A stretch of 63,873 nucleotides of DNA, filler included, from Hyphochytrium catenoides (lineage: Eukaryota; Protista; Hyphochytriomycota): NCBI GenBank assembly GCA_900088475.1. It is 7 parts of 7 records of this genome, joined end to end, with 100 filler letters (N's around TTAATTAATTAA, not from the genome) between each part and the next. Parts side by side here need not be neighbours in the genome. Positions count along the whole stretch, not along the records: positions 17,010 to 48,427 come from FLMG01001427.1; 6 more parts are not named here. The stretch is one strand, 5' to 3'. The notes under the pieces were generated by a model that worked only from the letters and a program-made list of their open reading frames with translations, was not told the origin of the DNA and did not search any database. Each line of letters starts with the position of its first letter. Within the stretch, counting starts at the first letter, position 1. This document shows positions 19,816-38,855 of this stretch, one piece after another. A program made the translations under genes and the position numbers.

Positions 19816-22800
19816 ATGAGCTTCACACAGCTGGAGGTCCTGGTAGGGATTTTGAGGAGGAGTGGACAGCTCGTATCTATCGAGAAACATCCCAGCGCCA
19901 GAGGCTACAGAGCCGTGATCGAAGAAATCCCACCTGGTGGTGAGTCCCTGTCGCGCTGAACTCGTCGGCCTCAGCTTGCTCTGTAAAGCCTCTTCACTCT
20001 TCGTGTGTCTTCGTTACTCGTCTCTGCCTGTAAGCGTCCTACCTCTTGTCGGTTTTACTTCTCCCTTTTCAGCACACTATGCCCGTGACGCACACTATGC
20101 CCGTGACTTATGGAGCTCCTAATATTTCCATCAGCTGAGAGGCAATTTTTATTGGACTTCCTTCCGGACTCCGGTGAAGAGAAACGGGAGGTCATCGTCT
20201 GCTTGTGCTGTGAGAACATCTTCTCCCCGTCCCAGTGGCTGCTTCACAAGGGAGACAGGGGAATGGAGACTGGCCATCCGAATATTATCCCCGTCACTGC
20301 TCAGGGCATCTCTGGGAAGGAGGATGAGAGACGGGAGGTGGTAGGAGGTGATATGGACGCAGACGCGCTAATGTCAGACTCCATGGCTTCTAGCGATGGA
20401 GAGTACATCCAGAGCGCGGAAGAGAAAGAGGAGAGGAGCGCTCAAGCCTCCAGAAAGCGACCACGGGTTGTTATTAGAGAGTTAAGTGCCGGAGAGGAAG
20501 ACTTAGAGGAAGTTGACGAGGAAGAGTACTCCATACATAGCGACGAAGAACCTGAGGATGCTAAAAAGGTAAAGGCCGAAGGAAGCACGCTCTGTCTGTC
20601 TGCCTAGCTTTCGTATCCTCTAGCTCTTGGTAAGAGACAGTAGTATAGTCTCTCGGCCCTAGATTCCCCTAACATCAACCCATCCCTTCCTTGCCCCGCT
20701 ACATCTCTCTGCTCTCGCAAGCCTCGAAGGTCCAAACCTGGTACGTACCGGCCCGATCGCTTTTTGTCCATCATCTGTGCTTATACTCTCTCTCTCTCTC
20801 TCACCATCTCTCTGTAGATATCACTGCAGAAGCATCACCGCAAACCGCGAAGAGGCGGAAGAGTTCCCCCAGCGCCATTGAGCAAAGGTGCCAGCCGACT
20901 CGATCCACACCTGTCCTGCAATCTGCATGGCAGACTCCCGTTATGACATGCTGCTCGCTCTTGTCTGCGATGGGTGCACCAGGTGTCGCTGTCTTCAATG
21001 CGTATGTTCTTACTTCTCCATGTGTGCCCAGGTCAATCTTTGCCACCAGGCGCTCTCCTAGGACCATCCCGGACGGCAAGTGCCTGAAATGCGGCATTGA
21101 GGTGCATGGCAGCCTAGGGGTATGACTTCCTTCCCCCCTTTCTTCTCCCCGTATGCTGAGGGCTTCTTTCCTCCTATTACTTAATATATATGTGACTGTC
21201 CTCGGACTTTCTCTGTGCGAATTGCGTTATGCAAGGCTTTGTGCACCCGCTGCTCCCAGGATGAAGGTACGAGGACGACTCCAGCAGAAAGTTACGCAGA
21301 AGACGACAAGGAAAATGAAGGTTGGCTCACGATGTAATGGCTAAGCCAAGGAAATCTTTGGGGAATAACGCCAACTACTTTGCCGTTTATGCTTTGCCAC
21401 TTGACATCTGCAGCTGAGGCTCCAGAAGGATGCCGAGTGTGTTTCAAGGGCAATCTTGAGCATACCATTCTCCTGTGCGACGGTTGTGATGCGGAGTACC
21501 ATCTGCACTGCCTTAAGCCTCCTCTCTACGTCATTCCCGAAGGTGAATTTCCTTATCTGAGATCCTTTCTCTTAAGCTCCCTACTGTCTCTCGATCAAGA
21601 GGTTTTATGGAAGACGTTTAAAGAGACAACCCAAGAATATGTTTGTCTTCCTAATTGGATGTCCAACAGTTCATTAACACTTCTTATCTCTCACTGGTGC
21701 TTTGCCTTCAAGGTAACTTTTACTGCATGTACTGCGCGCCATTTGGTCGTGCACGTCTCTCAACGAATGGAACGGACCGCGGGAGGAGTTCGGCAGGCCG
21801 GACATACCTCGGTGCTGCTTGCAGGGGAGTTACATGCTACATGCAGAAAGACTGTAAGGGCTCAATATCCTGACTCTCCAGACGCGCTATAATTTCCCCA
21901 ACAACCTTCTCTCGTCAGATCTTGCCTTACGCAATTCAGGACTACGTATTGTATGACCGTATGGCAACCCTCAGACGTCCGCTAGTCTTTCATCTGCTTC
22001 CCTGAGACTATCATTGCGATCTATCCCTTCTGCTCCCTTGGGCTGCTTGCATTCACCGTTTCCCTTTTCAGCTTCTCATTATCCTAGTGCAATTCAATAA
22101 CACCCTATCTCCTCTACCTCTGTAGCCACCCTGCTTTTTCGCTCTTACATCGGAAGTAAAGGCATGAGGAAATCATTAGGAACCTATAGCAATCTTGAGC
22201 AGGTGCGAAAGTGATCGCCATACCAATGACACCTCGTTCCTGCGGCTTAACGCCTGGCGCGTCGTTGCGGAGGCAGGACGAAACCGCGCCGGATTGCTTC
22301 ATCCTTGCGCGTTGCACTTACTGAATGTCATACCGACACCCCTGACCTCTACCCCGTCGTTCCTTTGAATGCCAGGCAGCAGATGCGTACGACCAGGCTG
22401 CAATGCGCTTACACGGGGAAAAGGCCATCCTCAACTTTCCAGAAAAGTATGGCTTACCTCCTGACGAGTCTAAACCTCCCCTAGATTTAGCTGAAGCGAC
22501 TCGAAAGCTCGTCTCTTATCGCACCGCTCGTGAGGAGGACGAGATAGAAGAGGGACTAGCGCAAGAGGACTCAGAGCAAACAGGGAGAGGCCTATCTTGT
22601 GATGTGCACAGAGAGATGCAGGAAAGCCTAAACAGACTACAGGTAGTATGGAGCCCCTTTGTTGCGCTCTCATCCTGTCCTCCTCACTAAGTTACCTGTG
22701 GAAGACAGAGGTTCCTTTTTCCTAGATTGGCGCTCCTTGTTCGGGCTCCGCTGACCCTTTCCTCACGTAGCCATAATTCGCATCGCTTGATTTCCTCTTT

Positions 22801-25800
22801 TGCTTCACACTTGCTTGCAATCTAAGCGTTGGAGCCCTAAATTCTATCTAACATACGTTTTCAAGTTTATCATGGCCTCGGTATCCTGTGCATGTGAGCG
22901 ATTGCTCCCCACTGCCGCGTCTCTTACCCCTGCGCTCGAAGCGTTTAATACAATGAAAGAAAAGATTCTGAAGGACCTCATAGACACTGCTCAGGCGTAC
23001 AAAGAGAGCGAGAAGGATTTTCGAGAAGCTAAGACGGCAGGAGAAGCACTGGGTGCCAGGATATCTATGGTCTCTTATCTCTCGGAGGCCGATCTTAAGA
23101 AGAGTCTTCGTCTATTTCACCGTTTCCTTCCCACAGCTGAAGTTGGGAAGAAAACCCCATTTAGATCTCCTCAACAGTTGGAAGAAGCACAGGCAGATAT
23201 ACATAAACTGAGGGAGGCCGATGTAACAGGTATTATCAAGAAATTAGGGCCTATCAAGCCGAAAGACCTCTCTTAATGCTCGGCTCCTCGCTACACTTTA
23301 TTTACTGGACCCGTTGCGTACTTCTGCCGTTGGATATCACCCGTCTATCCTCCAGCTCGTAATTTCATCTCGTGATTTCACTAGAATATTTCCTGACCCA
23401 GTCGTCCTTTCGGTTTAACCTGCTCTCTTCGCCCCATGACACCCCGTTGTCTCTTTGGCTTCCCGCGTTCTGCAGCATCTAAAGAGTGGCATGCAGTCCT
23501 ACAATCAGTGCACAACTCATTTCAGGAACTAAAGTCTGCGTCTCAGAGTGACGTCCAAACCCTAAAGCGTTGGTCTTCTGTCTCAAATCGTTCATCATCT
23601 CCATCCTCCGTACAGACTCCTTCCGCCTTGAAAACGAAACACGCTGTGACGTGGTACCATCAGCTCCTTCGTATTCCCTTTGTTTATAAAGGGAAACTTA
23701 TATATCGGTTTGGTCTGGTAGAGGAGCCCTGGCAACTTGAGGACCTCTCCGAGGTTGAGACGGTGAATGTAAGGGTTTTCTTCACCGAGTACGAGAGTGA
23801 AGGACTGGTGAAGAAAGAGAAGGCCCTGCTCTCTTTATTACGTTCTCATGAGGTTGGCGAAAATCCCTCTTCTCTGACAGTAAGAGACAGACGGAGAAAA
23901 GCAAGGGAATCCCTACCAGACAGTAGTCTTTTTCCTGTCACCCCTGATGATCTAAAGAAATATGTCATCAGCGACAAAGACTATTATTTCCTAGCAAGGA
24001 CTGCAACCACATCCTCATATCAAAGAGGAGATGGTGCAGAGAGCGCAGGACTTACGACTACCCCAGGAAGGAGACGGAAAGAATCAATGACACCTATGGA
24101 GATCGAGGAAGATGACGCAATAGGAGATCAACTGGAAGACAGGGAGGATGCGACCAGTGCACCAGGATCCATTGACGTGACAACGGAGAATGTTGAAGTG
24201 CTGACTCAAGATACCAAGCATAGACAGCAGGAGATCGCAGTTCTACATCAAGAGCTTGAGATAAGTCGACGCTCTCTCGTGTCGTTGTCGCACAAGCTCC
24301 TAGAGATCACCACATCACCTTCAATAGATAAGTATGAGGCTGTGAAGGTTGAGAGAGAGGACGTTAAGAGGAAAAGCAGGGACTATACCATGGTGCGGGA
24401 CATGATGAAAGGCATTAGAGAGAAGTTGATAGAGGAGTATGGGTCCAGCTGCGGAAATCAGGTAAGCATTAAACTTCTGGCTACGTTCTGTGTTAGAACC
24501 TCTTGCATCGATACCGTCACGTCCGTACGAAAGGGTCTTCTAGGTCTGTCAATCTGCATGTTGGCATCTCGTAAGGATACAAATCGTAGGTTTCGCTGAC
24601 AATTTCTTATGACTCTGTTGGCTCCGCGTACCCTATGCTGTTCTCTCTCCCGCCATGTGTCCATTCCCTTTTGTAGTGGAGTGTAAAATCCCAGGTCCTG
24701 GCGTCTCCGTCAATTTCAGCAGCCTTATCCGGCTTGAAGGATTGGATACAAAGTCTGCATCTTGAGCTTGACTACTTTTACGGTGAGCTTCGAGAGATGG
24801 AACCCGACGGGCTCGAGAGGGAGTCAACCGGACTAAACAGAGAAGTAAAGAAAGCCCCTGAAAGCACCAGAGAGGAGGCTCGAGACGGTGGGCTTTTGAA
24901 GGGCGACGCAGTGAAAGCAACTGAATCGAAGGGACTCGAAGAGACAGTAATGAGAACTGTTGACTCCGAGAGAGACGGCAACAGCACTCCAGAAGGGTTT
25001 GAAAACCCAATGGAGGAAGGAGACGGTAGATTAGAGGTTTTGGTGTCCCATTATAAGGAGTTCTACATCCAAGAGCTCCTCTCTCTCTGGACCAAGAAAG
25101 CTTACACTCAGCAGGCTCTCTACCTCCTTCGCCGTTATGCCAACGTTGCAAGCGTCGAGGACCTGAAAGTCGACAGGGAAAGCGCTGAACGACAGGACGA
25201 TTTGGATAGATTGACGAGGCAAGGCAGAAAGAGGGTATTAGAGGAGGTCTTGGCAAAGGTCGACGGGCTATTGGAGGAGCTTGACGGACCAGTATGGCTA
25301 AGTCTCGGTGAGATTCGTAAGCAAAGAGACCCTCCTTGTTGTGCTACCCTTTTCAGTCTTCAACAGTGGCATTGCTCCACACTTGCGCAGTACCTGCTGA
25401 CCGCCATCCAGAGGATTCATTAAAAGATTGTTCCATTCTTGTCCACTCAACCTTACTCCATTAGGCACCTGGGCAAGAGATACCTGGAACAAACGCACGA
25501 AGCATGGTGCCTTGAGCCGGCAGACCTCCGTCTTTTATCACAACCTGTGCTTTGAGCATAGAACTCCACCGCAACACCCGGAGAGTCACCTTCGACTACA
25601 GGTGAGCATCTTCTCGTGGGCTCTTACCTCGCTCAGCTGCTAAACGGCTTATATCCGCCTTTTCTCGTCCATCCTTCGTGGTGACGCACAATAACCTTCC
25701 CGCTCTTCTCTCAGATGGTGCTTCGTGCCATCACTGATTATATCCAAAGAGTGCAAGAAGGACAGCAGATCCGCATAGAGAAGCTTACGAAAAGCTACTT

Positions 25801-28800
25801 CGATCTTGTTCCAGAGGAAATACTGCTTTTATTGGTAAGCTGCTGAGCAATAAGCAAGCGATGGATGCTAGTTACGTGGCTTACAGAAGAATATACCCTC
25901 CTGAGAGCGGCTCCGCTAAAGGTTAATGGACCCCTTTCCTTGGCTTAACAGGTGCACTCTTACGACTACATGCGAGCTCTTAGGGAGACGGCGATGACTG
26001 CCTCTACGGAAGGTAAGTGCTACAGGGCGGATCTCGGTAGCTTTAGCCACCCGAGGTTCCATGAGTTTGTCACGCTTTGCCCTTCCGACTCAAAATGAAG
26101 TAAAACAGCTTAAGCAAACATCATGCCAGGAGCTGGGAGACATACATGAGCTTTCAGAAGTCAGGCCCCTGACACAAACTTAAATATAGGAACCCAGCTA
26201 GCTTTCGAAGTGAAGGAATTAGCTAATTTCTGCGGGCCGAAAGCGTGGGCAGAGGAAGAGACTCCAACCGAGGAAGGATCGCAACAAGAAGGACGCAGGG
26301 CGCTGTCGGATTCGCCTCAATCTGATAACGTCAGTGGAGAAGAAAGAAAACCAGAGCACCAAGCGGAAGAGACTGGTGCAGTGGAGGAAACAGCTACAGC
26401 TGAGCACGCGCAAGCTCCTAATGGGAACGTATGGACTCTTACTCTTTGTCGTACGCTTCGGAGTTACCAGCCGTCACTGACAGCTCCGCTTTGTGCAGGC
26501 GATACTTCAAGTGGAGGCCGTCTCGATGAGCACCGTGGAAGAAGGAGGACCTGGAGATGATAGCGGCAAGGAACATGCTCTTCAAGAGCTGCAAGTCTCT
26601 GAAATAGGTGACAACGTAGGATTAGTAGACGAGCCAGCAACCGTAGAGACAGATCGAGAGAAGGATGACCTTGCACCGAGTCGCATGGAAGACATCGATA
26701 CACAAGGACGGGAAGACAGTACAGTACAGAATGTCTCGAATGCCGACGATAACCGTCCTGAAACTCAGACAGTACAGAGTACGAAGCTCGAAGGACCACC
26801 TGAGACCGATGATAAAAGCGTGGATCAGAAAGGCGACGAAGAATCCAGCTCCTTCCCAGCTGGGGACGGCCCAAGACAACTTGGACAGCACCAAGCCGCT
26901 AAGCAGAGTTCCGGAGGGCCGACTGACAATGACACTCCACACGTACCTATCGAAGTTTCCGACGGGATTGCTTGCACAGAATCGGGCAGAGAAGCAGAAC
27001 TAGCAGGAAAGGAAGGCCTTCACGTCGTAAGAAAGGTTTTAAACGCATGACTTTCTTGAGAAGCTGAATTCAATTATCAATCCTCACCACCTCATGTGGC
27101 CCTTTTTTATGCTTCTTTCTTGATGCTTGACAGGCGGCATCTAGGGCATGCCCTTCTAATGAGAATCTAGACCAATCCATGATAGAGGAAGGGAAGAAGA
27201 TGGCACTAGAAGATTCTTTGCTCAGGAACAAGGTAACCGTTAGGTTGAATATGCTCTTCAGAAAGCCTTTACCTACCTCTCTTGTTCCGATACCTATTCT
27301 GGGCCAAGCTCCCGGTTCGAAGTTTCTCTAGCTCTTCAAAAGTGGGACTTGAAACCATCCCCTCATGCTTCATGTCCAAGAGGATGTTGCTAGTTTTGCG
27401 CTTTGACCATCTTTGACTTGATAGGATGAACCCATGGAGAATCCCACTGAAATGGAAATGGAGCTCTCAGCACAGGAACCAAAGGTAGTGAGGCTTCTAC
27501 CCAAACAATGCGTTTTCTTGAATAGAACCTATCTCCTCAAACCTTTTCTCCTGTCACCCTCCTTATTACCCTGATTCTCTGTCACGATAGCATCCGCTCT
27601 TTACCGGTACTTTCATCCTTTTCCACAACGTCCTGCTGGGGCGTCTTTACTAATCTACCTGTAAACAGTGTGCAGCCGGGAATGCGGCAAAGGTACTTCA
27701 GGATGCCGTCCCGCTCTGTGGCAGCCCATACCTGGAGCTTGACCTTATGTGTCAAGAAGACCTGCGTTCACATGAGCAAGTAATAGCGCACATCTCTATT
27801 CAGTCCCGTATAGGCCGCTTGCATGCCTTCTCATGTCCTTTCGTCTCGGCTCTCATTCTCCGGTCAGGACCCAGGTCAAGGTCGCAAGGGCCAAGGCATC
27901 AAGGTGTCTGGGGAGAAAAAAGAAAGCACTGAGGACGGAAACCTAGATATAAGGGAAGATAAGGAGAATGGGGCCTCGCCGACGGCATCATCTGAAGATG
28001 AGGGTGAGCTCAGGAATAGAGAAACGACCAGAACTCTGCTGACAAAGACGACAGGGAGCGGCCACAAGAGCGAAAGTAAGAATCGAACCTTGACAGATTT
28101 AACCTCAACTCTGCCATCTTCTTCCATCGCTGCCATTGTACTCTGCACCCTCCCTCTCTTTAATACTTTTGAAGAGCTCAGCTTTCCTTCATCACTCGTT
28201 TGGTGACCCTTTGTTCCAGTAGCCAATAGCTTTTTGGTAATTGACATAAGCCCCAGGTACGCCTCACCAATCTTCAACGTATGTGAGCGCCAAGTCATGG
28301 GCGGCTGCGCTAGCAGCGGTGGGCACTCTGTGCGAAGCGGTGGCTTCAATATTGGAAAAGAGGTGCAGAAATGCTCTAGCAATAGTTCGACCGCCAGGTA
28401 AGTTGACATAGGACATTGGGGATCTTATGATTATTGAGGCTTCGGCTCTTACTCCCATCAATGCTGCCTCTTCCCCTTCGTGACTTTAATGCCTTGACAC
28501 GCAAATCCGCATGTGGTGGAGTCTTGTCACCCTGCGTATGTAGGCTACCATCTAGATTGGCTAACTTTTCGTATCTCCCTAGGCCATGGAGTGGGTCGCC
28601 ATGGTGCTCCTTTCCTGTCCTCGTCTACATCCTTTTCTCTATTGAACAATGTGATGGCGGCAACTGTTTTCGCTCGGCTCACTCCAAGTGTGCGACGAGT
28701 GGCTATCATCGACTGGGGTCGTTATACTGGACAGGGAACAATGGAGCTGGCTGAAGGAGATACAGAAACTCTCTTCTTACAGGTAGTACATTCTCTCTCC

Positions 28801-29843: not shown

Positions 29844-31301
29844 CTAAAGGTTGTCAGCGCAATTTGCGGCAGGAGGATTAGCGGGATCGGACCTATCACC
29901 AAGAGGTGGAGTCTTGAAAAAGGGAGAGAGAACCTCGCCCATAGGAAGGTAGCTGTGGAGAAAGGCAGAATTGGCCCTCGATCCCAGATAGATCAGTACC
30001 CCAATCGTGGCCAGGACGGTCCCTACCATATTTACCGCAGTGAGAGGAACACCCCAATATAGAGGTAAGATGATGCTCAGCAGCACTCTTCGGAACGCTT
30101 GGAGTACTGAGAAGCTCAGTGGTGAAGTGCGCGCAAGGACCATAAAGCTAAGGGCAGAGTAGATATACTGGGATAATCCACATGTAAGCAAAGAGAGAAC
30201 CGAGCCGGAAGTAGTCTTGGACGTTAGGATTATGGAAACTTCGCCACTGATGGGGAACAAAGGCATTCCCAGCACGAAGGAGAAGCAGCATAATGCCCAA
30301 TGCAGATTGATGTCGTCCAGGATCCGTTCCTAGGGCAAGGGGAAATTGAAAACACTCTGTTAACGGGAAGGGAGGTGGGACTGCATGGGAAGCAGCACCG
30401 AAGCAACACAGAATATGGTCGTGATACACAGATTCAGCTGAAGACATCTCTCCCTCCTGCCCGGGAATGCGGCACGCACGTCAGACCATAAAGGATAGTC
30501 TCAAGAAAGCCTTAGTGCACCACAATGTACCTGCAATAAGTAGCCAGAAAACACTATCAACAGGGCCATTGATATGTTGGCTATCGCGGCGGAGAGGACC
30601 TCCATGAGCCCTACGGACTCTGCTCTCAATGATGATAGAACAAGGCCCAAACAGAGCGGCACAAGTGCAACAATTCTAAAGACGGAGGTATTTTGCTGGA
30701 TCAAGAGGACAGCGAAGCCTGCTGTGAGAGCGGGTTCAAAGGCTAAATGCATCTGCGCATAGCTCTCGCTCCCGCCGCCAAAGTTGGCGTTTGTGCATAG
30801 AGAGCCGAAAGCTTGACAGAGAGACAGTCCCAGGACGTATCTTGTCTTTGTGCCAAGGAAGGCTTGAGTTGGATAAAGCTTGAGGACGTAAAGAATCAAA
30901 AAGCCGCTTATCGCAGAAAGAGCAAACTGTGCCAGCGTTAGAATGACTGGAAGCCGTGTCCCTCTCACGAAGTCAGCACCCAGCACCTCAACGAAGAAAG
31001 AGAAGACAAAACATCCGGCGTACAAGGCTCCGATGACAGCTGGGCTGTCTCCTAGGGCGACCGCAGCCGTATCGATAGTACTCAGTCCCCTTCTTCTCTC
31101 AGGCATAGAGTGAGCACCATCTTCTTGGTTGGGAATGACTACTGCCGAAAGCTCTATCTCTGATAATAGGGGCTCGGACGACAGCGAGAGTCTTCTCTTC
31201 TCAGGGGAAGGCCCACCTTCTCCAATACTTCCATTGATTGCAGCAGTAAAATCCTCCTCAGACTCGGCGCTTCGCCTTCGCTGAATCATTTCCTGAGGCA
31301 T
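29844..31301 (-). CDS. Triose-phosphate/nucleotide-sugar transporter family (TPT/DMT) membrane protein, 2 exons, ~418 aa
   Basis: Exons 31301-30531 and 30329-29844, joined by a phase-0 GT-AG intron. Multiple TM helices; motifs PVILTLAQF, FEPALT, LVPLCLG, TSPLSFSV...RRV, NMVGTVLATIGVLIY. Confidence 0.85.
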
Positions 31302-31439
31302 ACTAACAGAGGCCACTTCTCCTCAGCATGATGAGGCACCCCAGTCCATACGCAACCCTCCTAACGACGTGACTGGAAGGGGGCTCTCCAGACCAAGCCT
31401 CTCACCTTTCTGCAATCATCCAAGGCAGAGAACGCATTT

Positions 31440-33260: not shown

Positions 33261-34004
33261 TTACCAAAGAGAAAAGCTTGGCCAGTAGCTGGACTCTGGC
33301 TTCGTCCCTTCCTCCAGGATTTGCCGAATCTTTGCGAAGATGCTCTTGGGCCCCATCTCCCCAACATAATAGAGTACAGACGGGGGAATAGAGCCATTCA
33401 GGTTCATGTGAGCGATAATGTTGATCTCTGTGAGATCGTCAGTTATCGAACGGAGGACGTAGCCAATAATGTACGCATGACCACGCACAAAGTCAGCTGG
33501 CCGAGGATCGTGCGGGTGCTCAATGGAGCGGGACGCAATGACGGTCATCCTTTGATCTTCCAACTCGCTAACATGTGTCAGCACTATAAAGTCTCTCGCC
33601 GCGACGACAGTGTACGACACCCCCATCGCATGCCGTACTTCGGTCCAATCGTCAATTTTGTCCAGACAATCGGTTCTTTGACAAGAATCATCGAACTCCG
33701 GGATCCTGTCCAGGTCAATGACCAAATCACGTACGGCATGCCGCGGGGCTTTAACCTTTCCGACGGCCTTCAGGCATGGCCATTCGTTGTCTGGAGCAGT
33801 TCCGACAAAAAAGTTGACATCGTCTTTAAGTCCCTTGTGCTCCCAGTAGTTGTCCACAAGGTCTTCCCCGGCAAGTCTGGCCATCATGGCGTCGATATTT
33901 CCCTTCGCATAATCCCTCAGCTCTGAGTGGAGCTTTAGTCGGTCTGGTTCACTCATAACTGGGACGTCATCGGCCAGCTGGGGCTCTACCTCCTGGTTGC
34001 TCAT
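33261..34004 (-). CDS. START (SRPBCC) lipid-binding domain protein, 247 aa, intronless
   Basis: W...K....V, CLKAVG, RIPEFD, VAARDFIVL, IASRSIEHP...P..DFVRG, GYVL, NLNGSIPP are START signatures. First ATG at 34004. Confidence 0.88.
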   Translation of the reverse strand: MSNQEVEPQLADDVPVMSEPDRLKLHSELRDYAKGNIDAMMARLAGEDLVDNYWEHKGLKDDVNFFVGTAPDNEWPCLKAVGKVKAPRHAVRDLVIDLDRIPEFDDSCQRTDCLDKIDDWTEVRHAMGVSYTVVAARDFIVLTHVSELEDQRMTVIASRSIEHPHDPRPADFVRGHAYIIGYVLRSITDDLTEINIIAHMNLNGSIPPSVLYYVGEMGPKSIFAKIRQILEEGTKPESSYWPSFSLW

Positions 34005-34869
34005 GTTACCGGTCTGTCCTGTCAGTCCGCTTTTTTCAAAAAGGCTCAGCTTCCGATGCTCTGGTCTAAGTGCCAACGCGTTGTCCAGGAGGTAATATAG
34101 AGAATGAGGTCCAGAGCTGGGCAGACGCTAATCAGATGTGCGCCTCCGTCAGTTGCAACTCTGAGGAAAATGTGCAATAATCTTCATCCCCCTGCGGCTG
34201 TCTATGCAAACGGCAGGGAGGAATACCTGTGAAGGAAAGTTAGTGCCAATCAGCAGTCGGACAGTTAGCATCTGGCGGCGAAATATCGGGGCGGACAGGG
34301 GCTTGTTAGGGGCAGGTGGACAGGTCAGAATCAGACGTATTACTACTTTACGTGTCACGAGCGTTTATCTGAGAATTGACGTATTTCGCTTAACAAAGCC
34401 AATCGAACTATTATTCCACAACGGACATTTCTCATTATTCCTCTTTTTCCTGGATAGATTGTTATCATCATTGATCCTAGCCTCTTATTTATGTACTTAT
34501 TCCGGACACAGGAGGTGGTGGCCTCTAACGGCAAGCTTGGCTGCCTGTTTACTGTACTCGCCTCATTCTTCAGAGTCACAAACAATCACATCAACCCTCT
34601 GGTCGGTCTCGGGCTCCTCATTATCAATGATGATTGTCGACAACGTCTCAAGGCAATAATGAAGCTCGGTACTACCAAGGGTACCAGGTGGTTGGCTAGG
34701 TTAACTCACTCATATTAGTGATTACTAGGATATTAATGAGCATCCATAATGGCGTTACACTGCAGCCAAGCGGTCAAAAACTCTGCAGCTTTGGCTCTTC
34801 TCTTATTCGGGAATCAAGTAACTGGGAGAGTGGAGGGACGGAAGGGCGAGGGAATGATAACGCTACATC

Positions 34870-35778
34870 TTAGATCTTGGTAGAATCAGATCCGCAATAG
34901 TTGTAGATAGCTCTGCCGTTGAGAGGCTGTACATCCCTATTGTTGAAGTTCAGGAATGGTGCCTGTGGAAACGCCAAGACCTGCGAGAGCTGGGTAGTGA
35001 AGATGTCTGAGATAGAAGCGTAGACAGTACTGTGAAGTACAACCCAGTCAACGTTCTCTGTGCACGGAGACCTTGTGAGGCTTCCTTCGTAGTGATAAAA
35101 TCCCTTAGACATGTCCATAATGGCTCCAAGATCCAGCGGCTCCTGAATTATAAGCCCCTTCGGACTTCCATGGCCGTAAGTGTTAATCTGTTCTCTGGCA
35201 TAGGTGGAAATCTGGTTGAAGACATATTGCTGCTTCTCTGCATTGCTCATTCCGCCAGAGCGACGGAGATACTCAGAATCATGTCCAGAAGTAGCATTGT
35301 GAGTTTCAGGAGTGTGAATGAACTGCCCGATCACAAGCTTGCTGTCATCATCAGCTGCATGAACAAAGTGAAGCTCCATGGGGGGTCTGGAGCCCATTAT
35401 AGTGTGCTCTGCAAGGTAGTGCAAGTGGGCATTGATGAGCTTGTAAGTCTTGTTTTTCCATTGTATTTTGTAGTTGTCAGGCTTAAGGACAGCGATGTTA
35501 AGTGGCCCATTCACTTGAACTTCGAGAGTTCCCGGAGGGATGACGCCGTGCTTTACAACGAGATGCGTTGACTGGGTGCACTCTGTCGGTGTCGGAGGGA
35601 GTTCAATGGGTGACTGCCTCTTACCAGCACATGTGCCGCAGGCTGGCTCCCCCCAACGACCCTGCTCAATATAGTTGAAACAGTAGTCAGGCCCACTGCC
35701 ACCGTCAGCCTGTGCACATGAAGCAAGCAAACCAACCGCCATAGCGGCGCAGATTGCGACAGTCTGAAAGCTCACCAT
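34870..35778 (-). CDS. Secreted alpha-carbonic anhydrase, 302 aa, intronless
   Basis: Signal peptide; CAGKRQSPI; Zn ligands in AHLH and MELHFVH; AEHT; YHYEGSLT; NNRDVQPLNGR. Confidence 0.92.
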   Translation of the reverse strand: MVSFQTVAICAAMAVGLLASCAQADGGSGPDYCFNYIEQGRWGEPACGTCAGKRQSPIELPPTPTECTQSTHLVVKHGVIPPGTLEVQVNGPLNIAVLKPDNYKIQWKNKTYKLINAHLHYLAEHTIMGSRPPMELHFVHAADDDSKLVIGQFIHTPETHNATSGHDSEYLRRSGGMSNAEKQQYVFNQISTYAREQINTYGHGSPKGLIIQEPLDLGAIMDMSKGFYHYEGSLTRSPCTENVDWVVLHSTVYASISDIFTTQLSQVLAFPQAPFLNFNNRDVQPLNGRAIYNYCGSDSTKI

Positions 35779-37771: not shown

Positions 37772-38855
37772 CTAGCGGTAGCCGAGTACAATAAGGACAA
37801 TAGCGTAGACGGCAAACGAGAACCAGCAAAGCTGGAAGATGTAGAAGATGATCAAGTTACGCCACCCCACACATTTCCCTAACATGTAACGTGCTCAAAG
37901 AAGTTAAGGATGACAAGCCAGCCATTGCGCAAGAGGAAACTAGGGACGAAAGGTAAGAGGCCATGGTGAGATAGGTAGCATGATAAGGATATAGTGATGG
38001 TCATGATCTTCTATGCAAACGTTGCAGTCTTCACAATGCTCTGCCGACGCCGGTTGATCAATCCCGCAGATGTCTGCATGCATACATCGTTAGAAGGGGA
38101 AGCTGGGAGCGCCAGCTGTAACTTGATCTTCGCTTACCGCAGAAGGTGTACCATCGCCTGCCTTTCTTTTCCAATTCTACTTCGCCCACCTTCTTCAAAA
38201 CGATTCCTGGATCCGACAGCGCTGTCAATAGCATTGTAGCTGTGGATAAGGCCCACAAGATGATGCTGGCATAGTATTGCGTCTCAGACCAATCATGCCC
38301 TACGACTCTGCCAAAGCAGCGGAGTGCTGTGAGGACGATTGACTATAGATAGGAGAAAAGTAAGCGAAAAGAATATAAGGGCACACTGCAGGAACCAACT
38401 AACATTGAGCTGGACTAGAAGCAAGCCGCTCCTTTGGCTAGTGCTAGAAGAGAGGTCGCCTTACTTACATTTGGGAAATAAAGATATAAGTAGCGGCTTG
38501 CAGAAGTGCGAAGGTCATTGAAAGCAGCCCCCAGTTTGGGCCAACTGCAATGAGGATCCGGTGCTTACGCCGCAAGAGTACCACGATAGACCTGCAGACA
38601 ATACCATAAATGTTAATCGCTCAGTGGCGACACTAGCTGAGATTATGCCAAGACTAGTCCGTACCCAATCCTCTCTATGCCTGGCAGTCCGGAAGGCTGG
38701 ATGTGAGGGAGATACTTATGTCTTTCAGCTTGCCCGAGTAACGCGGAAGGCCCTTTCTCATCATCTCCTTCCGCTGCATCATCGCCATTCAAGGAGTGCT
38801 GGATCCTGCGTCGAAGCAGGAGAACATCTTCCTCTTCCGTGGCTTCAGTGTCCAT
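37772..38855 (-). CDS. DHHC-type protein S-acyltransferase (palmitoyltransferase), 5 exons, ~227 aa
   Basis: Exons 38855-38665, 38591-38469, 38307-38138, 38073-37993 and 37890-37772. Translation contains VGPNW, SDPGI, FCDICGIDQPASAEHCEDCNVCIEDHDHHC-YMLGKCVGWRN-LIIFYIF. The DHHC motif is completed only by removing an AT-AC intron. Confidence 0.9.
37891..37992 (-). other. U12-type (minor spliceosome) AT-AC intron, 102 nt
   Basis: 5' splice site ATATCCTT at 37992-37985. Branch box TCCTTAAC at 37910-37903, 12 nt before the 3' end (...TTTGAGCAC). No polypyrimidine tract. Splicing joins T+GT = Cys of DHHC. Confidence 0.92.

What the first reader, a model, noticed from the sequence alone, without database searches (positions are those of the whole stretch)
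37891..37992. AT-AC minor-spliceosome (U12) intron splits the catalytic Cys codon of a DHHC palmitoyltransferase
Seen: on the minus strand the exon reads ...GAC CAT CAC T|ATATCCTTATC...CATCCTTAACTTCTTTGAGCAC|GT TAC ATG... Only AT-AC splicing restores D-H-H-C-x4-K-C-V-G-x-R-N. Unspliced, it reads DHHY and hits a stop; the other three introns are ordinary GT-AG. Known: ATATCCTT and TCCTTAAC are the U11/U12 recognition consensuses, and the minor spliceosome has been lost repeatedly across protists, including several algal stramenopile lineages. Inference: this organism retains a functional U12 spliceosome, which may be unrecorded for its lineage, and active enzyme depends on minor splicing. GT-AG-only gene finders would mis-annotate the gene.
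Basis: partly seen in the sequence, partly recalled or inferred. Interest (0 to 1): 0.8.

Follow-up and report, generated by a model that had tools for sequence, protein, structure and literature searches.

The report
Minor-class intron in a hyphochytrid gene
A fungus-like protist related to the water moulds keeps the rare 'minor' RNA-splicing machinery and uses it to cut a real AT-AC intron out of a lipid-attaching enzyme gene; this is expected for its kin, but its minor introns also carry an extra signal that may explain a known oddity in one of the machine's RNAs.

Summary
The intron is real. The 102-nt AT-AC intron (37992-37891, minus strand) has a textbook U12 5' site and branch site. It is the only splice that restores the DHHC motif, and a transcript-type contig joins exactly 37993 to 37890. 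The assembly holds U11, U12, U6atac, a U4atac candidate, CENATAC and CRIPT, plus dozens of similar AT-AC sites.

The organism is not an alga. It has no light-harvesting genes, its aconitase is stramenopile, and its contig count and three rhodopsins match Hyphochytrium catenoides, a relative of oomycetes, which are known to keep minor splicing. DHHC genes are classic minor-intron hosts, and two unrelated environmental DHHC genes have an AT-AC intron at the same codon. The finding is therefore a new member of a known kind; I found no earlier record for hyphochytrids.

A side result is more interesting. U6atac is the 'CC variant', which pairs poorly with the canonical 5' site. Candidate AT-AC introns show a biased +9 to +13 stretch (C at +11 in 14 of 17) complementary to U6atac nt 8-12. 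This may compensate; it is inferred and untested.

The parts
37891..37992 (-). U12-type AT-AC intron, 102 nt, phase 1 in the Cys codon of DHHC
   Evidence: junction seen in contig of run X1
37985..37992 (-). U12 5' splice site ATATCCTT; pairs with the 5' end of this genome's U11
37980..37984 (-). intron positions +9 to +13; 3 of 5 pair with U6atac nt 8-12 (part of the biased extension seen across candidate AT-AC introns)
   Evidence: inferred pairing
37903..37910 (-). U12 branch site TCCTTAAC, complementary to this genome's U12
37891..37892 (-). 3' terminal AC
37993..38073 (-). exon 4: cysteine-rich domain up to D-H-H and the first base of Cys; Pfam DHHC positions 11-35
37772..37890 (-). exon 5: rest of Cys, x5-C-V-G-x-R-N, hydrophobic helix, stop; Pfam DHHC positions 39-71
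38074..38137 (-). intron 3, GT-AG, 64 nt
   Evidence: RNA joint
38138..38307 (-). exon 3 (hydrophobic helix, DPG motif); 5' boundary inferred
38308..38468 (-). intron 2, GT-AG; acceptor inferred from frame
38469..38591 (-). exon 2 (first hydrophobic helix)
   Evidence: inferred
38592..38664 (-). intron 1, GT-AG, 73 nt
   Evidence: inferred
38665..38855 (-). exon 1 from the likely ATG; whole model 227 codons
   Evidence: inferred

Best explanation
An old U12-type (minor) AT-AC intron in a DHHC palmitoyltransferase-family gene of a hyphochytrid, very likely Hyphochytrium catenoides. U11 reads the 5' site and U12 the branch site. U4atac delivers U6atac, and U6atac with U12 catalyses the cut. Joining T to GT makes the TGT Cys codon; retention gives a stop. 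Shown: the sequence, the spliced junction, the snRNA genes and their complementarity, and some minor-specific protein genes. Inferred: that the minor rather than the major spliceosome does the cut, the species name, and enzyme activity. The organism inherited minor splicing, as oomycetes did. The site inside the Cys codon is shared with other eukaryotes and is probably not a special regulatory device.
For: Junction in contig. Unique frame-restoring splice. U11 47.5 bits (cut-off 39), U12 55.9 (53), U6atac 69.5 (33), U4atac 47 (53; E 1.6e-5). The U4atac candidate forms a -40 kcal duplex with U6atac, reached by 1 of 2000 shuffles, and a separate U4 gene exists. CENATAC E 6e-16, CRIPT, a 25K-type match, two zf-U11-48K matches. 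AT-AC pattern genome-wide: 122 hits against 48 for the reversed control. Candidate hosts include RRP46/EXOSC5-like and Sm-like genes and a second DHHC gene. The second DHHC gene's AT-AC intron has flanks that read like human ZDHHC14 (S-P-A-x, phase 2). Two metagenome DHHC genes have an AT-AC intron at the identical DHH|C site. Species: 4758 scaffolds plus mitochondrion published, 4759 contigs here with the last one mitochondrial; three rhodopsin genes, as published; aconitase falls in a 99-support clade whose named members are all stramenopiles, outside the oomycete clade.
Against: RNA support is one low-depth contig from a run only guessed to be RNA. U4atac is below the Rfam cut-off. PDCD7/59K and SCNM1 families were not found, but those searches rang nowhere and are uninformative. 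G000 is 61.0 Mb against 65.7 Mb published. No nuclear 18S rRNA was recovered to confirm the species. The protein has Y-M instead of the usual P-W after DHHC and seems to end after one post-DHHC helix, so activity is unproven.
Confidence: 0.93

Rival explanations
1. The intron is cut by the major spliceosome as a U2-type AT-AC intron, and the minor RNAs are relics.
For: U2-type AT-AC introns exist (noted in PMC8280824). U6atac here cannot pair with +6 and +7 of the 5' site.
Against: Perfect U12 5' site and branch site, and no pyrimidine tract at the 3' end. Intact snRNAs with matching changes between U4atac and U6atac. The CC variant is shared with oomycetes, Acanthamoeba and Physarum, which have minor introns (PMC2396436).
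Confidence: 0.03
2. The organism is an alga or another lineage thought to have lost minor splicing, so this is an unexpected retention.
For: Ochrophytes are reported to lack minor introns (PMC10639083). The aconitase tree does not resolve the query within stramenopiles, and raphidophytes are as close by identity as oomycetes.
Against: No LHC match. Contig count, mitochondrial contig and three rhodopsins match H. catenoides.
Confidence: 0.03
3. The intron was kept or placed in the catalytic Cys codon as a regulatory switch on palmitoylation.
For: The site recurs in other eukaryotes. Human ZDHHC16 has a U12 intron one codon downstream. Eleven human ZDHHC genes host minor introns.
Against: Retention of any stop-bearing intron kills the enzyme equally. 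No other DHHC paralog here has a U12 donor at this site. The published survey favours neutral explanations for minor-intron evolution (PMC10639083).
Confidence: 0.1
4. Assembly artefact or dead gene with a chance motif.
For: The assembly is a polymorphic diploid draft (PMC5795050). The residues after DHHC are unusual.
Against: Spliced contig, open model of 227 codons, and 0 of 300 simulations give the signal.
Confidence: 0.01

Closest known systems
U12-type (minor) AT-AC introns of oomycetes (Phytophthora, Saprolegnia) and Blastocystis
   Same: Same 5' site and branch site, a related stramenopile lineage, and the same CC-variant U6atac as reported for oomycetes (PMC2396436).
   Different: Hyphochytrids were not found in the surveys I could search. 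A U4atac candidate is present, where one survey found none in most water moulds and proposed a hybrid U4/U6atac (PMC11347168). The AT-AC class looks dominant: excess over control about 74 hits against about 21 for GT-AG, with patterns that are not identical.
Minor introns of human ZDHHC genes (ZDHHC1, 5, 8, 9, 11, 11B, 13, 14, 16, 17, 18)
   Same: The DHHC family is an established minor-intron host (PMC8280824 supplement; PMC2831892). The second paralog here (L057) has an AT-AC intron whose flanks read like ZDHHC14's.
   Different: No listed human ZDHHC intron lies in the Cys codon. The nearest, in ZDHHC16 (GT-AG), is in the next codon (Pro), 3 nt downstream. Whether the two are related by intron sliding is not tested.
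DHHC protein S-acyltransferases (Pfam PF01529; ERF2, ZDHHC9 in PDB)
   Same: Complete cysteine-rich pattern and DHHC motif, DPG motif upstream, hydrophobic helices.
   Different: Y-M replaces the usual P-W after DHHC. The model ends soon after the next helix, with no TTxE motif seen (read by eye; the usual motif is from my own knowledge).
C-rich stretch after the 5' site in Acanthamoeba castellanii U12 introns (PMC2846911)
   Same: A bias downstream of the canonical 5' site, in another species with CC-variant U6atac.
   Different: That paper gave no mechanism and thought it specific to Acanthamoeba. Here the bias is position-specific and complementary to U6atac nt 8-12.

Membership tests
U12-type intron | 5' site RTATCCTT | tested here: met
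   ATATCCTT at 37992-37985
U12-type intron | branch site TCCTTAAC about 10-20 nt from the 3' end, no pyrimidine tract | tested here: met
   37910-37903; 10 nt between motif and terminal AC
U12-type intron | removed from the RNA at these ends | tested here: met
   contig joins 37890 to 37993, ends AT..AC on the minus strand; single low-depth contig
U12-type intron | complementary to the organism's own U11 and U12 | tested here: met
   duplexes; snRNA alignments
U12-type intron | splicing depends on minor snRNPs | not testable with these tools
   needs knockdown or lariat mapping
U12-type intron | intronIC-type score above the minor threshold | not tested
minor spliceosome | U11, U12, U6atac genes | tested here: met
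   all over Rfam cut-off
minor spliceosome | U4atac gene distinct from U4 | tested here: inconclusive
   47 bits, under the cut-off of 53, but full length, Sm site, strong pairing to U6atac, and a separate U4 on C1841; likely real
minor spliceosome | minor-specific proteins | tested here: met
   CENATAC, CRIPT; weaker or ambiguous 25K-type and zf-U11-48K, a domain also found in other proteins; PDCD7 and SCNM1 not found, uninformative; 35K and 65K not tested
minor spliceosome | U6atac AAGGA box pairing with 5' site +4 to +8 | tested here: not met
   CC variant: +6 and +7 mismatch; a known variant in oomycetes and others (PMC2396436); no second, AG-type copy found
DHHC S-acyltransferase | DHHC cysteine-rich domain C-x2-C-x9-HC-x2-C-x2-C-x4-DHHC-x5-C | tested here: met
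   exon-wise Pfam hits E 7e-6 and 0.007; pattern complete across the junction
DHHC S-acyltransferase | four transmembrane helices and TTxE motif | tested here: inconclusive
   three hydrophobic stretches and no TTxE seen in the 227-codon model; no fold run because the joined step was left out
DHHC S-acyltransferase | auto-acylation and transfer activity | not testable with these tools
   needs assay

The most novel reading that the evidence does not exclude
In lineages whose U6atac carries the CC variant, the lost pairs with intron positions +6 and +7 are made up by a second helix between U6atac nt 8-12 (UUGAG) and intron positions +9 to +13 (consensus near CUCAA). This would be an extended 5' splice site, here in a hyphochytrid that also keeps a true U4atac. 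It would explain a variant called 'difficult to explain' in PMC2396436 and the unexplained C-rich stretch of Acanthamoeba minor introns.
Probability: 0.35. Interest if true: 0.62.

Novelty: new member of a known kind. Interest (0 to 1): 0.33.

Why it matters
It adds hyphochytrids to the lineages with a working minor spliceosome, which fits loss being confined to ochrophytes within Gyrista rather than general. It offers a Gyrista U4atac that bears on the proposed hybrid U4/U6atac spliceosome. It gives dozens of introns on which to test how CC-variant U6atac recognises the 5' site. The headline as first written, a surprising retention in an alga and a catalytic-codon switch, is not borne out.

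Tried and rejected
Algal host: rejected, no LHC match. Rhodelphis: considered from mitochondrial gene content, dropped after the aconitase result. Mitochondrial nad7, nad5 and cox1 searches gave mostly unnamed environmental kin and did not place the organism; nuclear 18S was not recovered. Alternative GT-AG or GC-AG splices around the site: none restores the motif. U12 donors at the same codon in other DHHC paralogs: none on a contig with a DHHC match. A ZDHHC16-type site one codon later: two hits, neither at a scored DHHC match, unresolved. The loose pattern has many false hits (35 in the control); one lies inside an open aconitase exon (L061). Metagenome hit L071 is not a DHHC gene. The Physarum minor-intron paper is not held, so prior mention of the extended 5' site there is not excluded. 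The big protein search was not used.

Full report
Observation. On the minus strand the 102 nt from 37992 to 37891 start ATATCCTT, carry TCCTTAAC at 37910-37903 and end in AC. The flanking exons hit Pfam DHHC at profile positions 11-35 and 39-71, and exon 4 matches ERF2 and, weakly, ZDHHC9 among solved structures. Trying every GT, GC or AT donor with every AG or AC acceptor nearby, only this pair gives an open frame with DHHC-x5-C; unspliced, the frame reads DHHY and stops after 17 codons. The combined signal appears once in the piece and never in 300 simulated copies.

Transcript evidence. One run (X1, kind guessed as RNA) holds a 214-nt contig of depth 2.6. It joins 37890 to 37993 exactly, with 81 letters on the short side, and also skips the 64-nt GT-AG intron upstream. 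A contig lacking two introns must derive from spliced RNA. It is a single contig, so it shows that the junction exists, not how efficiently it forms. The five-exon model has 227 codons; introns 1 and 2 are inferred from frame only.

Machinery. The assembly holds U11 (47.5 bits, cut-off 39), U12 (55.9, 53), U6atac (69.5, 33) and a full-length U4atac candidate (47, 53). U11 and U12 are complementary to this intron's 5' site and branch site. The U4atac candidate has an Sm site and pairs with U6atac at -40 kcal/mol, matched by 1 of 2000 shuffles. A separate U4 lies on another contig. CENATAC and CRIPT are present, with weaker 25K-type and zf-U11-48K matches. PDCD7 and SCNM1 were not found, in searches that cannot show absence.

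Other minor introns. An AT-AC pattern gives 122 hits against 48 for the reversed control. A GT-AG pattern gives 84 against 63. Hits include repeats of the same site, so these are rough: dozens of AT-AC introns under about 230 nt, and fewer GT-AG. Frame-restoring candidates fall in RRP46/EXOSC5-like and Sm-like genes and in a second DHHC gene. EXOSC5 is a known shared human-plant U12 host (PMC2831892).

Organism. There is no light-harvesting protein match. A long aconitase exon has oomycetes and raphidophytes as best named hits (78-79%). It falls in a clade of support 99 whose named members are all stramenopiles, outside the oomycete, raphidophyte and brown-alga subclades (one gene, quick tree, rows limited to the top hits plus a few distant ones). 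The assembly has 4759 contigs, the last a 48-kb mitochondrial sequence. The Hyphochytrium catenoides paper reports 4758 scaffolds plus a mitochondrial record (PMC5795050). Three microbial rhodopsin genes are found, as published for that species. The total length differs (61.0 against 65.7 Mb), so the name is very likely, not proven.

What is known. Minor introns and snRNAs are established in oomycetes and Blastocystis and reported absent from ochrophytes (PMC10639083; PMC2846911). No searchable paper joins Hyphochytrium with the minor spliceosome, and two species lists I could check lack it. The species table of the largest survey was not available. Retention in a close relative of oomycetes is the expected state.

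The host gene and the position. Eleven human ZDHHC genes carry minor introns (PMC8280824 supplement). The second DHHC gene here (L057) has an AT-AC intron after S-P-A-x in phase 2, as the flanks of human ZDHHC14 read. For the site in question, a scan of metagenomes found two unrelated ERF2/ZDHHC9-like genes (L070, L072; GC 58% and 64%, organisms unknown) with AT-AC introns of 119 and 97 nt at the identical DHH|C position. L070 has a full U12 branch site; L072 lacks a clear one. The site is thus not unique to this gene. Human ZDHHC16 has a GT-AG minor intron one codon later. No other paralog in this genome shows a U12 donor at the Cys codon. The enzyme needs the splice because retention brings a stop; no evidence points to a special role for the split Cys codon.

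Side result. U6atac reads GCCGA where humans have AAGGA, so intron +6 and +7 cannot pair. This is the CC variant reported for oomycetes, Acanthamoeba, Physarum, a moss and early animals, and called difficult to explain (PMC2396436). I took the 17 held candidates that start AT and have AC 6-13 nt after the branch motif, chosen without regard to positions past +8. Position +11 is C in 14 (background 0.29, p 7e-6), +12 is A in 10 (p 2e-4) and +13 is A in 9 (p 1e-3). These p values are uncorrected; about 32 position-by-base tests were possible. Genome-wide, sites with C at +11 number 34 against 6 in the control, and sites without it 32 against 17 (Fisher p about 0.03). The +9 to +13 tendency is the reverse complement of U6atac nt 8-12. 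Mean pairs are 3.2 of 5 in that register against 1.6-2.8 in the others. Both environmental introns also have C at +11. A C-rich stretch was noted without explanation in Acanthamoeba (PMC2846911). I infer a second helix that offsets the lost pairs. The set is small, only one member is RNA-verified, GT-AG candidates show only a weak trend, and a protein preference could give the same bias.

Verdict. It is a new member of a known kind, interest 0.33, with most of the remaining interest in the U6atac and U4atac side results. The gene was searched exon by exon; the joined protein was not sent to any search or fold tool.

Noticed in passing
L003:1501-1628 (minus), G000 C1895: U6atac is the CC variant; candidate AT-AC introns show a +9 to +13 bias complementary to its nt 8-12.
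   Followed up: partly
L004:48-177, G000 C215: U4atac candidate just under the Rfam cut-off, with strong pairing to U6atac, in a group where U4atac was mostly not detected and a hybrid spliceosome was proposed (PMC11347168).
   Followed up: partly
L057:1501-1598 (minus), G000 C3289: Second DHHC gene (ERF2/ZDHHC9-like) with a 98-nt AT-AC intron whose flanks match the human ZDHHC14 position.
   Followed up: yes
L070 and L072: Environmental DHHC genes of unknown eukaryotes with an AT-AC intron at the same DHH|C site, both with C at +11.
   Followed up: partly
L013, L056, L039, L031, L052, L059, L048: Candidate minor introns in Sm-like and RRP46/EXOSC5-like genes (weak Pfam support); HSBP1-like, EngB-like and others recognised only by eye or unassigned.
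   Followed up: partly
window 37874-37888 (minus): Residues after DHHC are Y-M-L-G-K, not the usual P-W-x-G-N; the protein seems to end after one more helix.
   Followed up: no
G000 C428, C2047, C1506, C2857, C2991, C2495, C3910: Many DHHC paralogs are split near Pfam positions 35-39, i.e. at or beside the DHHC motif, without a U12 donor at the Cys codon; their intron types could not be read.
   Followed up: partly
window 47274 and 24580 (minus), 20613 (plus): Three more GTATCCT sites in the piece; none has a convincing U12 branch site at a fitting distance.
   Followed up: no
G000 C4759 (L006-L010): 48-kb mitochondrial contig, standard code, with atp1, nad7, nad9, nad11 and a possible rpl10; partial inverted repeats; no tRNA-Thr or tRNA-Gly found by ARAGORN.
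   Followed up: partly
G000 C2531 and C3799: Three microbial rhodopsin genes, two on one contig, fitting the published channelrhodopsins of H. catenoides.
   Followed up: partly
window 20110-28200 (plus), 29844-31316, 33261-34076, 34870-35778 (minus): Neighbours: a long gene with Tify-binding and PHD domains, a triose-phosphate-transporter-family gene, a START-domain gene, and an intronless alpha carbonic anhydrase with a signal-peptide-like start.
   Followed up: no
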